Shown here: piece by piece, positions 1-12,581 of the stretch | Layout: each line of letters starts with the position of its first letter | How positions within the stretch are numbered: position 1 is the stretch's first letter | NCBI GenBank assembly: GCA_024704765.1 | Contig: JAKMXF010000365.1 | Location: 496,001 to 560,000 of the forward strand | Length of the DNA: 64,000 nucleotides | Reading direction: 5' to 3' | Source: Oopsacas minuta | Lineage: Eukaryota > Animalia > Porifera | Translations under genes and position numbers: made by a program | The notes under the pieces: model-generated | Told to the model about the DNA's origin: nothing | The model's database searches: none | What the model saw: only the letters and a program-made list of their open reading frames with translations

Positions 1-291
1 AATAGCTGCTGTTACCTCGAAAAAACATATCAGTATAAGAATTACATGTTTTACTAATCGTGATTTCAGATCTTTAAGAATAGCTTCTGTTTCGAAGTCT
101 CTGACGTCCGCCAATGCTCTCCTATATCTCCTCTTAATTATCATCAATTCATACAAAAGGTACATAATCCAAAACCCAGATACGAATATACTTATTCCTA
201 CCACTATCCCACCATACATATTAATTATTTCGCTGAACGTTTCTATGCGAGGTAACCATTTCATTATTATAGAATTGTCAAAGGAATTCAT
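1..291 (-). CDS. 5' part of an unidentified multi-pass membrane protein, running off the left edge of the window
   Basis: Manual translation from ATG at 291 is open to base 1: MNSFDNSIIMKWLPRIETFSEIINMYGGIVVGISIFVSGFWIMYLLYELMIIKRRYRRALADVRDFETEAILKDLKSRLVKHVILILICFFEVTAAI. It has a hydrophobic helix, a basic loop (KRRYRR) and a second hydrophobic helix. It is absent from the ORF track because no stop lies inside the window. Confidence 0.55.
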   Translation of the reverse strand, partial: MNSFDNSIIMKWLPRIETFSEIINMYGGIVVGISIFVSGFWIMYLLYELMIIKRRYRRALADVRDFETEAILKDLKSRLVKHVILILICFFEVTAAI

Positions 292-729
292 GTTAGATGC
301 TTTGAAAAATCTATAATTTATTTATCTTATATTGTCTGCTCAATATTTTCTTTTATAGCCTACAATAGCTAGGGTAATAGTTTAGGAAAAAGGAGTTTCA
401 GACCTAACACTAAATTGATACTTAGAAGATTGAAAGATATTATAATGAAAGAATTCACTATCAAGAACTTTCTTCTTTCAGTATATCAGACATCTGATTT
501 GTTATATTAATTATAGTACAGAATTGATGAATCATAATTATCTTACAAATATTTTCGATATTACAAATTTGGATTTTGTTGCATATTTTGCTAATAATAC
601 AATTATTTCAATCAAAATTATAAAAATCCTTCTCAAGTTCCAGGATATATATTAGTGATAATTAGATATTGCGTGTGCATACACATTTCTATTTCTCAGT
701 GATTTTTAACGAACAGCTGAGAGGAAATT

Positions 730-4096: not shown

Positions 4097-4703
4097 ACGA
4101 AAATTAACATAATACATCAAAACACAAACAACTTAGCATTATAGCTTATTTGAACTTTAGTTTGCCAATTATTTTATAAAGATTATTATTCATGTATTAA
4201 TGCGAATAATAATACATTGGTGTTTACAGCCATTTCTTCTTAATTAATAATTTGATTGAGATTATGCAATCATGATTTAATCAAGATGTAGCAGTTAGCC
4301 CAATAATCTCCGCGATATATCAATAAATAATTCAGTATTGCTATGTACACGATAATTTGTATACTATTTTCAATATGTACTGTACACAATATTCTTCTAT
4401 GCAATTATGTGTGTATTTAACATAAATTTGCATGTACACGTTAAAACACCCACAGTATTGTATACTAATCCCTAAAGGGTATTAGATTTCCTTGATTATA
4501 ACCAATAATAATTCACGTAGAAAATGTGTGTGGCAATTAATTAATAAATTGTACATAGTATATATTATACACTGTATCCTCCCACACATTCACTGAATTA
4601 TCACTCATCAGCTTACCAACATATTAATGTTGGAATGGTTAATTGAATTATTTTTCGTAGCACGAAAAGGATTATTTTCATCTTTGATAAATATGTTAGT
4701 TAG

Positions 4704-6847
<2,144 letters not shown>

Positions 6848-7579
6848 AGAGTAACATCTATTCTTGTATGTCTATACCCCCAAGTCAGCTAAAATATTTT
6901 TGTCCAAACAGCATGTATAACAATATGTTTCTATTTTTAGACTATACTGATATCATAACGGAAATAAAATTGTTGTCTATAGCTTTGTCATAAAATATTA
7001 TAAGGTTAATTAGGGTAGTTTTTAGCACCTGTGCTCTCATGAATATTTAATAGCTGATGTAGCCAAAACTTATATATTTTGATGTGTACATTACAAATTT
7101 CCATTTGCTATATAGATTATATTCAAAATCTAAGTTTCAGGTCAAAGTTCTCTCAACCAATATTATTATGCAAATTTCAAACATAAAAGCTTTGATATTT
7201 CTCATTATTACTTCTATTTTAGTATACTGACGAATTCTTTCAGTATTAGGTTCCAAGAATACCCAGATCGTACAGGTAACCAATTTTACGTTCCGTACCT
7301 ATCCACAATCGATTCCTTGTTAACATAATTTAAGGTTACGCACTTTACTTATAAGGAGCAGTAGGATGCAATATAAATACCCCTGATTGTGTAACAATTA
7401 CTATTATGCATAAGTTTTCATTTACCTTTCCTTATTGAGATATTCATTTAGTGTAAGCACTATTAACCTTGAGAGGTATCAGATTTTACTTTGCACCAGC
7501 TCAGACGATAATCATTATCAAATTCATATCACGTTGTGACTCTATTCTATTATAATATTTCATTATTACATCATTGGAC

Positions 7580-9175
7580 ATGTCTACTGAAGTTTACGAT
7601 TCACTGAACATTGAGAGCCTTTCAGATGCTCGTCTAGGGGAATGTCTTAAATCTTATGGTTACCCTTCCCTTGGTCCTATCACAAGTAGCACGCGGGGCG
7701 TGTACATGCGTAAGCTTCTTACACTAGTTGGCAGATCGGGTAGTAACAATCTAAATGGTCCCTTTACTACTCCTATTCCTATCGCTAATAACCACACCAA
7801 GAGCCCTAGTACCGGACGATCCCGTGGGAAGAGAGTAAAGTCAACCACAAGTTCTGAAACCAGTTTTGGTAGTCCTCAGAATCAGCAGAATGGCAATGAA
7901 GATCCCAGGACGAAGATTTCCAAAATTGAGTCTCCTTCCTCCTCGAGGAAGATTGAGAATTCAATTCCATTTCCTCGCAGCAAGAGCTACTCCCCTCGTC
8001 TCGGAGACCACACAAGCGGATCAGCTCCAAACTCCTCCCCTGATCTCTTCTTCTCGGGGTCTCTTGAAGGGTGTCAAGATGAAAATAGTCTGTATAACAG
8101 ATCCTGTGGATCTAGCTCCAGTTCAAGTCGATCTGACCAATCACTAGACTCCCGTATGAACAGAGGTACAGATATTTCTATCCCTGGTTACTCTATGTAT
8201 GTATCATCAGCTGACCAACAGAGAGGATTAGTCAGAGATCTCCTCTACACTCTCAACAACCCCAAGTTCGTAGGATCAGATGTCTGCTTCCAGACTTCAC
8301 ACGGAGACCGTCTCTTCGCTAGTCGTGCTGTACTAGCAGCTCGTTGTCCATCCATGGTCCCTTATCTCTACAGCACGGAGGTAGCTGTACCCCTCAAGGT
8401 TATGACACTGACAGGCCAAATGTGTGTTGTATGGGCACGGCCTTCAGATCTGATTGCTAACGTAAAGTACCGAATATTCTTCCAGCAAGGAATACATATG
8501 AAAGCTCAGCGTCTTGTCTATGACCAGAAAGAAATGTTAGATCACATGTCTCTATCATCATTCGGGATATACGTAGCTTCTACGATACATCTGTTAATAT
8601 CTTCTGATGCAGCTCCTACTAATGATATTCCTGACGTAGAACAGTCTTTACAAACTCAAGAGGAAGCTCCAGTCCCAGCCATACCTTGCCTCGTGTCACA
8701 GTCTTCACTACCACTCGGTATGAAGTCTCCTCTTAACTCATTCAAACAAGAGATGATACGAGACGCGATGAGTTCTCTCAGAGACTCAGCTGACGGAGAG
8801 AAGGAAGAATCTCTTCCCTTCCATGTTGAACATGTAGTTTACTTGCCTGGGGTAGATCATGGTTGTGCTCAGAGCTTCTTACGCTATCTCTACTCAGACA
8901 CGATTGATCTTAACCTCTCACAAGTTGTACAGATAGCTACACTAGCTCACACATTCTCCATACACCACCTCAAGAATCAGAGTTTAGAGTATCTAAGACA
9001 ATCCATCAATGAGAATCACATCATAGACATCTTACATGAAGCTGAAAGGTTTGGCTGCGAAGAGATCACTGAAATATGTCACCAATACGCTAAGAAGAAT
9101 AATATTCAAATTGAAGAACGAATGAACCATAGTATGGTAACGGAGAATCTAAGCCGAATGCATCTCACACAGTGA
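7580..9175 (+). CDS. LEM domain + BTB/POZ domain interrupted by a ubiquitin-like domain + BACK-like helices; intronless
   Basis: LEM: LSDARLGECLKSYGYPSLGPITSSTRGVYMRKLLTL. BTB N-half: SDVCFQTSHGDRLFASRAVLAARCP. UBL: VMTLTGQMCVVWARPSDLIANVK...GIHMKAQRLVY...STIHLL. BTB C-half/BACK: FLRYLYSDTIDL...LAHTFSIHHLKNQSLEYL...IIDILHEAERFGCEEITEIC. The first ATG is at 7580 (the track starts on a TTG at 7574). Confidence 0.8.
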   Translation: MSTEVYDSLNIESLSDARLGECLKSYGYPSLGPITSSTRGVYMRKLLTLVGRSGSNNLNGPFTTPIPIANNHTKSPSTGRSRGKRVKSTTSSETSFGSPQNQQNGNEDPRTKISKIESPSSSRKIENSIPFPRSKSYSPRLGDHTSGSAPNSSPDLFFSGSLEGCQDENSLYNRSCGSSSSSSRSDQSLDSRMNRGTDISIPGYSMYVSSADQQRGLVRDLLYTLNNPKFVGSDVCFQTSHGDRLFASRAVLAARCPSMVPYLYSTEVAVPLKVMTLTGQMCVVWARPSDLIANVKYRIFFQQGIHMKAQRLVYDQKEMLDHMSLSSFGIYVASTIHLLISSDAAPTNDIPDVEQSLQTQEEAPVPAIPCLVSQSSLPLGMKSPLNSFKQEMIRDAMSSLRDSADGEKEESLPFHVEHVVYLPGVDHGCAQSFLRYLYSDTIDLNLSQVVQIATLAHTFSIHHLKNQSLEYLRQSINENHIIDILHEAERFGCEEITEICHQYAKKNNIQIEERMNHSMVTENLSRMHLTQ

Positions 9176-9918
9176 AGTGTAACTGAACTGAGCTGAGAGA
9201 GTGATAGCTTATTACTTCCGTAAATGTATTACGTAGTTATATACGGTGAAATAATGCAACTAAAAAGAAAATTGGTATATTAATTAATATATCTCTCTCT
9301 CACTTTTCTAAGTATATACTGTAACATGTTGTATGTATGTGTGCAGATCTTATCAAATGCACTAGTTTTCCGTTTTTATTTATGTATTTTCATGTATATC
9401 TTCTCATAAATAAAATTTGTGTTCTGACGAATTTGCTATCTAAAATACCAAATAATTACAGATTCACTCTCCTGGAGGAGGGTTAATTGAAATATTTGTA
9501 TTAATTCTATGGTCTGGGTCTGAATCCTGTCCAGGAATCGAGTGTTGTAACTTAGAAATTTCCTACAGAGAATGAGTATATTAAATAACCATGGATAATA
9601 GAGAAGAATTACCTTTGAAAAATACTATTAGCCAATTGATAATATATTGTAGATGCCGGATATAAGCACCATCCTCTGGAAAACTAGTCTCATATAATAC
9701 TGTATATTTTATGCGAGGTATAAGCATATATATATTGTTCTCATAACCGGCTTCCACTTTATCTTATAACTTATTTCCTTACCCCTGTAATTAGATTGTG
9801 AAATAATCTTCGAATATTAATTTAATTAATAATCCAGCACATACCTTTTTGAAATATTGATAGAAATATACCGACATAATCTACTCTTTAGAAACAGCTG
9901 ATATAAGTGATACTGGTA

Positions 9919-12581
<2,663 letters not shown>

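What the first reader, a model, noticed from the sequence alone, without database searches (positions are those of the whole stretch)
7580..9175. LEM-domain protein with a ubiquitin-like domain inserted inside its BTB domain
Seen: an N-terminal LEM motif and an S/P-rich linker are followed by BTB strands B1-B2 and helix (SDVCF...ASRAVLAARCP). A ~72-aa ubiquitin-fold sequence comes next, sharing with ubiquitin TLTG, PSD.I.NVK, GI..QRL and LS..I.ST.HL but lacking the C-terminal GG. An ~80-aa spacer, the rest of the BTB (FLRYLYSDTI) and BACK helices follow, with no TM segment. Known: LEM binds BAF-chromatin, BTB/BACK proteins are CUL3 adaptors, and uncleavable UBLs often dock to the proteasome. 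The animal LEM families I know (LAP2, emerin, MAN1, LEM2, ANKLE1/2) carry neither BTB nor UBL. Inference: a chromatin/nuclear-lamina-tethered CUL3 adaptor with a built-in proteasome handle, possibly an undescribed nuclear quality-control module.
Basis: partly seen in the sequence, partly recalled or inferred. Interest (0 to 1): 0.8.

Follow-up and report, generated by a model that had tools for sequence, protein, structure and literature searches.

The report
LEM-BTB protein with nested ubiquitin-fold
An intronless animal gene, under strong purifying selection and apparently transcribed, encodes a soluble chromatin-docking (LEM) protein whose BTB dimerisation domain is split by a complete ubiquitin-like domain; no database or paper searched describes this domain arrangement, and its biochemical role is still only inferred.

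Summary
Window 7580-9175 (+) is one uninterrupted 531-aa ORF. Pfam finds LEM (aa 10-49, E 1.6e-10), ubiquitin (273-341, E 2.8e-9), BTB (E 1e-10, in pieces) and the start of BACK. An AlphaFold model aligns to whole solved BTB domains across both halves (KLHL22 153/154 residues, SLX4 117/119). The ubiquitin fold (rmsd about 1 A to ubiquitin) and a roughly 70-aa disordered spacer loop out between them.

Five orthologues at 75-86% identity (four of them in syntenic, intronless loci), one at 47% and one at 24% identity share the domain order. dN/dS is 0.05-0.12 overall and about 0.01 in the ubiquitin-like domain, its most constrained part. One run with spliced contigs shows introns in both neighbouring genes but none inside this ORF.

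- The insertion sits in the alpha3/beta4 loop, the main CUL3-contact loop, and no canonical phi-x-E motif is recognisable.
- The N-terminal BTB half resembles only the BTB of SLX4, a dimerisation module.
- The C-terminal half and 3-box resemble CUL3 adaptors.

My best reading is a soluble, BAF/chromatin-docked dimeric adaptor of the ubiquitin system. CUL3 use and proteasome docking are unproven. No named relative, paper or large structure cluster has this architecture. I rate it a new variant of known kinds, of moderate interest.

The parts
7580..9175 (+). Complete intronless coding sequence, 531 aa plus stop
   Evidence: ORF list. Identical architecture in orthologues. No joint inside it in the spliced-contig run X4.
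7439..7579 (+). Probable 5' UTR. A pyrimidine tract plus AG ends at 7438/7439, where one X4 contig carries 11 non-genomic letters upstream.
   Evidence: Loose end at 7438 and the rise in depth from bin 7358-7554. Sequence. The 11-mer is absent from the window.
7607..7726 (+). LEM domain (aa 10-49), two helices
   Evidence: Pfam PF03020, E 1.6e-10. Aligns to LAP2 and emerin LEM chains. pLDDT about 82, helices 16-25 and 39-52 in the full-length model.
7817..7840 (+). Conserved basic cluster RSRGKRVK (aa 80-87), candidate nuclear localisation signal
   Evidence: Regex scan and conservation in P0006. The NLS function is inferred.
7730..8191 (+). Ser-rich disordered linker (aa 51-204; 24% Ser)
   Evidence: pLDDT about 30. 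Composition. dN/dS 0.08-0.17.
8192..8386 (+). N-terminal half of the BTB domain (aa 205-269): helix, two strands, two helices
   Evidence: Pfam BTB profile 11-36. SLX4 BTB is the only solved match, E 5e-7. Part of the single BTB fold in the model.
8387..8608 (+). Nested ubiquitin-like domain (aa 270-343), no C-terminal GG
   Evidence: Pfam PF00240. Ubiquitin chains at Z 14-15, rmsd about 1 A and Foldseek TM 0.9. dN/dS about 0.01.
8609..8812 (+). Disordered spacer (aa 344-411) with one conserved amphipathic helix (about 384-399). The distant homologue has only 26 aa here.
   Evidence: pLDDT about 30. Alignment.
8813..9013 (+). C-terminal half of the BTB domain (aa 412-478), preceded by the invariant LPFHVEHVVYLPGVDH
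   Evidence: Pfam BTB profile 53-109. Matches KLHL22, KBTBD2, BTBD6. pLDDT about 90.
9014..9172 (+). 3-box / truncated BACK helices (aa 479-531)
   Evidence: Pfam BACK profile positions 2-34, 20.9 bits. The A5 profile aligns through KBTBD4 residue 178. Helices in the model.

Best explanation
This is a real gene under purifying selection, and it appears to be transcribed. It encodes a soluble nuclear protein built as LEM domain, basic patch, a roughly 150-aa Ser-rich disordered linker, then a BTB domain followed by a 3-box/short BACK. A non-conjugatable ubiquitin-like domain and a flexible spacer are nested in the BTB alpha3/beta4 loop.

Proposed mechanism (inferred): the LEM domain docks the protein on BAF-coated chromatin. 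The BTB core makes it a dimer. The two looped-out UBLs keep the Leu8/Ile44/His68/Val70-type surface of ubiquitin and serve as fixed ubiquitin-like handles for proteins with ubiquitin-binding modules, such as proteasome or p97 receptors or UBA/UIM/UBZ proteins. The protein would therefore couple BAF-bound chromatin to the ubiquitin system.

The layout is N-terminal target-binding domain, linker, BTB, 3-box. This mirrors SPOP (MATH-BTB-3-box), so BAF or BAF-bound proteins would be the targets if CUL3 is recruited. Whether CUL3 is recruited is open.
For: Shown:
- Domain calls above Pfam thresholds.
- The LEM region aligns to emerin and LAP2 LEM and folds with pLDDT about 82.
- A complete BTB forms from the two halves. 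KLHL22 aligns 153/154 residues at Z 12.9, SPOP 150/153, SLX4 117/119 at 32% identity, each spanning model residues from about 1-6 to about 265-304.
- The UBL matches ubiquitin at rmsd 0.7-1.4 A.
- Ubiquitin positions 8, 42, 44, 68 and 70 correspond to L277, R311, V313, H337 and L339 (ungapped alignment). Their character is kept in all 7 family members, including the 24%-identity one.
- The UBL is the most constrained part: 1-4 non-synonymous differences in 74 codons per pair while synonymous sites are near saturation, dN/dS about 0.01 against 0.05-0.12 for the whole gene.
- Four orthologous loci are syntenic and intronless.
- Run X4 has GT..AG joints in both neighbouring genes, none inside this ORF, and far more summed contig depth over it.
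- No TM segment, and a conserved basic cluster at aa 80-87.
- The 3-box/BACK similarity is to known CUL3 adaptors.
Against: - No binding partner was tested. BAF binding, dimerisation, the NLS and UBL-receptor binding are all inferred from family knowledge.
- The Ile44-patch residues are partly structural, so their conservation is weak evidence for receptor binding.
- The Lys48 equivalent is not conserved in P0006 or P0153.
- The insert lies in the principal CUL3-contact loop, and no phi-x-E motif is recognisable there (and sequence inspection).
- The SLX4 dimer residue F708 aligns to a variable small residue, A250.
- The AF2 models rest on only 7 sequences (pTM 0.53 and 0.35) and say nothing reliable about how the UBL sits relative to the BTB.
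- The expression evidence is contigs of one run of unrecorded type, not raw reads.
Confidence: 0.5

Rival explanations
1. One reading: a true CUL3 substrate receptor. BTB and 3-box bind CUL3, LEM selects BAF-bound chromatin as target, and the UBL docks the complex or its products to the proteasome.
For: The C-terminal BTB half and 3-box match KBTBD2, KBTBD4, KLHL11, KLHL22, KEAP1, BTBD6, KLHL3 and SPOP at E 1e-8 to 1e-3. BACK scores 20.9 bits, equal to the Pfam cutoff. In SPOP the BACK region raises CUL3 affinity from 1.0 mM (as printed in the held text) to 13 nM (PMC3616122). The SPOP-like domain order fits.
Against: The roughly 150-aa insert sits in the alpha3/beta4 loop. [quoted passage not shown] In this protein the residues before the insert are YLYSTE and those after it are LPFHVEH, with no Met/Leu/Phe-x-Glu at the KLHL3 spacing. 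The N-half is SLX4-like. No complex model could be run.
Confidence: 0.3
2. A CUL3-independent, SLX4-type BTB scaffold. The BTB only dimerises, possibly also with the organism's SLX4, and the protein acts in genome maintenance on BAF-coated chromatin. The UBL would be read by UBZ/SIM-type modules of repair factors.
For: The N-half hits only the SLX4 BTB among 177,635 distinct solved sequences (E 5e-6 for the single sequence, 5e-7 for the profile; about 50% identity over 46 residues). SLX4 has the highest structural-alignment identity, 30-32%. The SLX4 dimer residue F681 aligns to the invariant L221. SLX4 itself reads ubiquitin through UBZ4 domains (PMC8599992 and the abstract of PMC11388903).
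Against: No other SLX4 feature (UBZ4, MLR, SAP, C-terminal SLX1-binding domain) appears at Pfam E up to 10. F708 is not conserved. SLX4 ranks only 30th-31st for the C-half (E 8e-3). The solved SLX4 BTB chains, which end at residue about 787-795, include no 3-box/BACK, whereas this protein has one. Heterodimerisation is pure speculation.
Confidence: 0.15
3. A lineage-specific accident: a retrocopied or chimeric gene whose ubiquitin insert is tolerated but has no function of its own.
For: The coding sequence is intronless in an intron-rich neighbourhood. The family is very small: 7 proteins in 1.84 billion representatives.
Against: The UBL is the most conserved segment (dN/dS about 0.01). It is retained at the same loop in a homologue of 24% identity whose spacer is 3 times shorter. 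Synteny is kept across species whose synonymous sites are saturated.
Confidence: 0.03

Closest known systems
SLX4/BTBD12 BTB domain (PDB 4ZOU, 4UYI)
   Same: It is the closest solved BTB: the only sequence match for the N-terminal half (E 5e-7) and the highest identity (30-32%) over 117-123 structurally aligned residues. The hydrophobic residue at the F681 dimer position is kept (L221). The conserved LYS/LYT motif in the C-half is shared.
   Different: No UBZ4, MLR, SIM, SAP or SLX1-binding domain. It has a 3-box/BACK that the solved SLX4 BTB chains do not include, a LEM domain, and a 150-aa UBL-plus-spacer insert where SLX4 has a short loop. F708 is not kept.
BTB-BACK CUL3 substrate adaptors (SPOP, KLHL3/11/22, KBTBD2/4, KEAP1, BTBD6)
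   Same: BTB fold followed by 3-box helices. The C-terminal BTB half and 3-box align at E 1e-8 to 1e-3. The SPOP-like order is target-binding domain, linker, BTB, 3-box.
   Different: No Kelch, MATH or PHR domain. BACK is truncated to about 50 aa. The alpha3/beta4 loop that carries phi-x-E is interrupted by a whole domain, and the motif is not recognisable.
LEM-domain proteins (LAP2, emerin, MAN1, LEM2, LEMD1, ANKLE1, ANKLE2)
   Same: N-terminal 40-aa LEM helix-loop-helix with the GPIT..TR..Y.RKL signature. It is soluble like LAP2alpha and ANKLE1.
   Different: None of the listed families (review PMC13144012) carries a BTB or a UBL. This protein has no TM, MSC/winged-helix, ankyrin or GIY-YIG domain.
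Integral UBL-domain proteins (Rad23, Dsk2/ubiquilin, parkin, USP14, BAG1, OASL)
   Same: A ubiquitin fold without a cleavable GG, with hydrophobic-patch residues retained. Structural Z is 13-14 to the Dsk2, Rad23 and OASL UBLs.
   Different: Their UBLs are terminal or tandem, not nested inside another domain's loop. This one is closer to ubiquitin itself (about 38% identity) than to any of them.
GMCL1 / germ cell-less (BTB-BACK protein listed in reviews with LEM-domain proteins)
   Same: It is a BTB-BACK protein tied to LEM proteins at the nuclear envelope, so a LEM-BTB fusion could be read as a Rosetta-stone link.
   Different: GMCL1 (9ijj) ranks only about 20th for the C-half (E 3.7e-4) and is absent for the N-half. 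There is no specific kinship.

Membership tests
LEM domain (PF03020) | A roughly 40-aa two-helix motif that matches the family profile above the curated threshold | tested here: met
   40.8 bits against a cutoff of 24, E 1.6e-10, profile 1-39 of 40. Aligns to LAP2 and emerin LEM chains. Two helices at pLDDT about 82. Also met in P0006 and P0153.
LEM domain (PF03020) | Direct binding to BAF (barrier-to-autointegration factor) | not testable with these tools
   Only the conserved GPIT..TR..Y.RKL signature is seen. No complex prediction is available.
BTB/POZ fold | A complete BTB core (three strands and five helices) formed by one chain | tested here: met
   The AF2 model aligns to 116-123 of about 120 residues of the NS1-BP, SLX4 and ZBTB8A BTBs and to 150-153 of 153-154 residues of SPOP/KLHL22 BTB-3-box. 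Each alignment spans both halves. Pfam scores 42.2 bits in pieces. The model is built from 7 sequences only.
BTB-BACK CUL3 substrate adaptors | 3-box/BACK helices directly after the BTB | tested here: met
   BACK profile 2-34, 20.9 bits, equal to the cutoff. The A5 profile aligns through the 3-box of KBTBD2/4 and KLHL11/22. Only about 50 aa are present, so the BACK is truncated.
BTB-BACK CUL3 substrate adaptors | phi-x-E motif in the alpha3/beta4 loop (KLHL3 M83-S84-E85), the largest CUL3 contact | tested here: not met
   The insert occupies BTB profile positions 37-52. The flanks YLYSTE|UBL...spacer|LPFHVEH have no large-hydrophobic-x-Glu at the KLHL3 spacing (sequence inspection against PMC3616122). 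Loop alignment is ambiguous, so this lowers the membership claim rather than excluding it.
BTB-BACK CUL3 substrate adaptors | Physical binding to the CUL3 N-terminal domain | not testable with these tools
   No multimer prediction or binding assay is available.
Ubiquitin family (PF00240), integral UBL type | Beta-grasp fold matching ubiquitin | tested here: met
   37.1 bits against a cutoff of 25.4. About 38% identity with no gaps over 68-69 residues. Z 14-15, rmsd 0.8-1.4 A. Foldseek TM by target 0.9.
Ubiquitin family (PF00240), conjugatable modifier type | C-terminal Gly-Gly exposed by processing | tested here: not met
   Ubiquitin R72-G76 corresponds to S341-S-D-A-A345, and the chain continues for 186 residues. 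It is not a modifier.
SLX4/BTBD12 | C-terminal SLX1-binding domain, SAP, MLR, UBZ4 | tested here: not met
   No such Pfam family at E up to 10. Only the BTB resembles SLX4.

The most novel reading that the evidence does not exclude
The ubiquitin-like domain was placed in the CUL3-contact loop of an SLX4-type BTB for a functional reason. It would act either as a built-in switch that gates CUL3 access or as a permanent ubiquitin signal on BAF-coated chromatin that recruits ubiquitin readers such as the proteasome, p97 or SLX4-type UBZ proteins. That would make this a previously unknown, ligase-independent or self-gated route for chromatin and nuclear-envelope quality control in early-branching animals.
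Probability: 0.15. Interest if true: 0.75.

Novelty: new variant of a known kind. Interest (0 to 1): 0.55.

Why it matters
LEM proteins, BTB adaptors and integral UBLs are each well studied, but they have not been seen together in one protein. A whole domain nested in the BTB alpha3/beta4 loop was not found in any other protein by the searches run here. If the protein binds BAF, it is a soluble link between BAF-coated chromatin and the ubiquitin system, in which the UBL evolves far more slowly than the rest of the protein. It also offers a natural experiment on how much the CUL3-contact loop of a BTB can tolerate. The similarity to the SLX4 BTB hints at a connection between BAF-coated chromatin and structure-specific repair scaffolds. 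The narrow taxonomic range and the lack of any functional data limit its reach.

Tried and rejected
- **More family members.** A profile search with the 7-member alignment returned only the same six proteins. A search with the distant homologue P0153 returned only itself. Two JGI metagenome scans found no relative. The exhaustive HMMER scan was swamped by polyubiquitins, and only P0002, P0006 and P0153 are true relatives in the top 150, so weaker relatives below 91 bits could be hidden.
- **ESM Atlas.** Searches by features and by shape found only generic BTB or ubiquitin clusters.
- **GMCL1 link.** A specific GMCL1 (germ cell-less) relationship was rejected: it ranks about 20th for the C-half and does not match the N-half.
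- **Splicing.** Removal of the UBL by splicing was not seen.
- **Membrane anchoring.** A TM segment was rejected.
- **Spacer helix.** The helix FKQEMIRDAMSSLRD was inspected for a UIM. Ser lies 2 and 3 residues after Ala where the consensus, as I recall it, has 4, so no call was made.
- **Identity of samples.** Cluster look-up gave no names or NCBI/UniRef sources. P0153's contig is not on record. A literature search for the run and sample accessions found nothing.
- **The 11 non-genomic letters at 7438.** They were not found in the window.
Full report
**1. Observation**

Window 7574/7580..9175 (+) is a single open reading frame of 531 aa from the ATG at 7580. A whole-protein Pfam scan gives these matches:
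- LEM at aa 10-49: 40.8 bits, cutoff 24.
- Ubiquitin at aa 273-341: 37.1 bits, cutoff 25.4.
- BTB: 42.2 bits in three stretches, best 419-475 = profile 53-109.
- BACK at aa 482-513: weak. It reaches 20.9 bits, equal to the cutoff, when aa 405-531 is scanned alone.

The ubiquitin-like segment aligns without gaps to ubiquitin residues 3-71 at about 38% identity (E about 1e-8 for a single ubiquitin chain). Ubiquitin's R72-G76 corresponds to S-S-D-A-A, so there is no Gly-Gly and the chain continues.

The LEM region aligns to the LAP2 and emerin LEM chains. No stretch is hydrophobic enough for a membrane span: the maximum 19-residue Kyte-Doolittle mean is 1.41, inside UBL strands. A basic cluster, RSRGKRVK (aa 80-87), follows the LEM domain and is kept in the 47%-identity orthologue.

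**2. Is the ubiquitin fold really inside the BTB?**

By sequence, aa 233-258 match BTB profile positions 11-36 and aa 419-475 match positions 53-109. The roughly 150-aa insert therefore replaces profile positions 37-52.

By structure, an AlphaFold2 model of aa 205-531 was built from a 7-sequence alignment (mean pLDDT 69, pTM 0.53). Numbering below is model numbering:
- BTB N-half elements at 7-59.
- A beta-grasp domain at 66-136.
- A disordered stretch at 140-210.
- BTB C-half plus further helices at 214-326, with pLDDT about 90.

An exhaustive structural comparison aligns solved BTB domains across both halves:
- KLHL22 BTB-3-box: 153 of 154 residues, Z 12.9, model 1..303.
- SPOP BTB/3-box: 150 of 153, Z 12.9.
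- SLX4 BTB: 117 of 119, Z 12.5, rmsd 2.6 A, 32% identity.
- NS1-BP: 116 of 119.

Ubiquitin chains align to model 64-139 at Z 14-15 and rmsd about 1 A (also Foldseek). The full-length model adds a confident two-helix LEM (pLDDT about 82) and shows aa 53 to about 230 as disordered. The nested topology is supported, with the caveat that the alignment is shallow and the orientation between domains is not reliable.

**3. Is it a real gene?**

A search of 5.8 billion proteins found five orthologues at 75-86% identity (two of them, P0001 and P0002, 86% apart) and one at 47%. All carry LEM, BTB and ubiquitin Pfam hits. An exhaustive HMMER scan of 1.84 billion representatives added one distant homologue, P0153 (512 aa, 24% identity). 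It has the same order, LEM / BTB N-half / UBL / BTB C-half / BACK, but only a 26-aa spacer.

The loci of four orthologues (P0002-P0005) are intronless and syntenic. Each has a protein kinase upstream and an M41/AAA (FtsH-type) protease downstream on the opposite strand, as in the window.

Nei-Gojobori estimates show synonymous sites near or at saturation, with dN/dS of 0.05-0.12 for the whole gene. By segment, among pairs where dS could be estimated:

| Segment | dN/dS |
|---|---|
| UBL | about 0.01 (1-4 non-synonymous differences in 74 codons per pair) |
| LEM | 0.00-0.17 |
| BTB N-half | 0.03-0.09 |
| BTB C-half | 0.09-0.11 |
| Linker and spacer | 0.08-0.20 |

The nested domain is the most constrained part of the protein.

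**4. Transcription**

No run is recorded as RNA. Run X4, from the same sample as the genome runs, nevertheless has contigs with GT..AG joints in the upstream kinase gene (4905>5235, 5476>5534). It also has CT..AC joints in the downstream minus-strand gene (9561>9844, 10117>10364), so it behaves as RNA.

It shows no joint between 7438 and 9343. Its summed contig depth is 14,000-57,000 over 7358-9327, against roughly 40-1,100 in the flanking bins. Contig depth is a poor measure, so I treat this only as a hint of high expression.

One X4 contig has 11 non-genomic letters immediately upstream of 7438/7439, where the genome has a pyrimidine tract plus AG. The 11-mer is not in the window. A 5' UTR intron or a spliced leader is possible. 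A relative, organism B (run X5), carries the ORF on one 1,700-nt contig with 40 substitutions and no gaps.

**5. What kind of BTB is it?**

The N-half, both as a single sequence and as a family profile, matches only the BTB of SLX4/BTBD12 among 177,635 distinct solved sequences (E 5e-6 and 5e-7, about 50% identity over 46 residues).

The SLX4 BTB is described as a homodimerisation module with key contacts at F681 and F708 (PMC8599992). F681 aligns to L221, which is invariant in the family. F708 aligns to the variable A250.

The C-half profile instead matches BTBD6, KBTBD2, KBTBD4, KLHL11, KLHL22, KEAP1, gigaxonin and KLHL3 (E 1e-8 to 1e-4), through the 3-box. GMCL1 scores 3.7e-4, SPOP 2e-3 and SLX4 8e-3. 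The domain is thus SLX4-like at its dimerisation end and KLHL/KBTBD-like at its 3-box end.

**6. Bearing on the CUL3-adaptor idea**

In KLHL3, KLHL11 and SPOP the alpha3/alpha3.1 region of the alpha3/beta4 loop carries the phi-x-E motif (KLHL3 M83-S84-E85). The phi residue buries more surface than any other residue, and mutating E85 abolishes binding. The 3-box contributes about 20% of the interface, and in SPOP the BACK region raises affinity from 1.0 mM (as printed in the held text) to 13 nM (PMC3616122).

Here the UBL and spacer are inserted in exactly this loop. The flanks (...CPSMVPYLYSTE | UBL ... spacer | LPFHVEHVVYLPGVD...) show no large-hydrophobic-x-Glu at the KLHL3 spacing. One defining feature (the 3-box) is therefore met and another (phi-x-E) is not. 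CUL3 binding remains possible but is not the default. I could not run a complex prediction.

**7. The UBL surface**

From the ungapped alignment, ubiquitin L8, R42, I44, H68 and V70 correspond to L277, R311, V313, H337 and L339. These are kept in character in all seven proteins. K48 corresponds to K317 but becomes N in P0006 and E in P0153. K6, K11, K33 and K63 are lost, K29 is replaced by Arg, and K27 is kept. This fits a receptor-binding, non-conjugated UBL, but part of that conservation is structural.

**8. Best explanation and rivals**

I commit, at about 0.5, to a soluble, BAF/chromatin-docked, BTB-dimerised adaptor. In this reading its two looped-out UBLs act as fixed ubiquitin-like handles for ubiquitin-binding machinery.

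Three rivals:
- The protein is additionally a CUL3 receptor with BAF-bound targets, in a SPOP-like layout: about 0.3.
- It is a CUL3-independent, SLX4-type scaffold linked to genome maintenance: about 0.15.
- The insert is a neutral accident. This is essentially excluded by the selection data.

**9. Comparison with the known, and novelty**

The LEM families listed in a 2026 review are LAP2, emerin, LEMD1, LEMD2, MAN1, ANKLE1 and ANKLE2 (PMC13144012). None has a BTB or a UBL. The one paper that contains the terms LEM domain, BTB and ubiquitin-like domain is an unrelated proteome list.

None of the family's clusters has a name or an NCBI/UniRef source. No ESM Atlas cluster of 50 or more members shares the combined shape. 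The protein is a member of the LEM-domain, BTB-fold and integral-UBL classes. It is not an SLX4 orthologue or a conjugatable modifier, and it is an unproven member of the CUL3-adaptor class.

I rate it a new variant of known kinds: a new domain architecture with a nested domain, restricted to a small animal lineage. First-stage notes on the same genome mention hedgling, which would fit a non-bilaterian animal, but I did not verify the taxon.

**10. Limits**

- The family has only seven members.
- The models rest on a shallow alignment.
- There are no raw RNA reads and no complex modelling.
- Polyubiquitins filled the top-150 list of the exhaustive scan, so weaker relatives may be hidden.

Noticed in passing
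window 9649-9684: A short element with about 10-fold higher summed depth than its surroundings and many divergent loose ends on both sides in all four runs. It looks like a high-copy dispersed repeat, perhaps a terminal repeat of a small transposon. It lies inside the region skipped by the X4 joint 9561>9844, so it is probably within an intron of the downstream minus-strand protease gene.
   Followed up: no
window 7427-7439: A pyrimidine tract plus AG lies directly before the point where one RNA-like contig (X4) carries 11 letters (AAAAAACTTAC) that are absent from the 64-kb window. This could be a distant 5' UTR exon, a trans-spliced leader or an adapter remnant.
   Followed up: partly
window about 4600-6847 (+): The upstream neighbour is a protein kinase whose last exon contains [15 protein letters not shown], which I recognise from memory as a CDKL-type activation segment. 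Introns at 4905-5235 (329 nt) and 5476-5534 (57 nt) are confirmed by GT..AG joints in run X4. Its long Ser/Pro-rich C-terminal tail lies in the same exon.
   Followed up: partly
window about 9343-10620 (-): The downstream neighbour on the minus strand is an FtsH/AFG3-type AAA-M41 protease. Introns at 9561-9844 and 10117-10364 are supported by CT..AC joints in X4. The same gene flanks every orthologous locus.
   Followed up: partly
window 7358-9327, run X4: 757 contigs of run X4 lie on the 5.9-kb stretch, 644 of them at 99% identity or more. Their summed depth over the LEM-BTB gene is 14,000-57,000, against roughly 40-1,100 for both neighbours. This may mean very high expression in that sample, whose tissue or stage is not on record.
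   Followed up: no
P0001 aa 384-399 (window 8729-8776): A conserved amphipathic helix, FKQEMIRDAMSSLRD, sits inside the otherwise disordered spacer. It is kept in the 47%-identity orthologue and absent from the distant homologue P0153. It could be an intramolecular or partner-binding motif for the adjacent UBL.
   Followed up: partly
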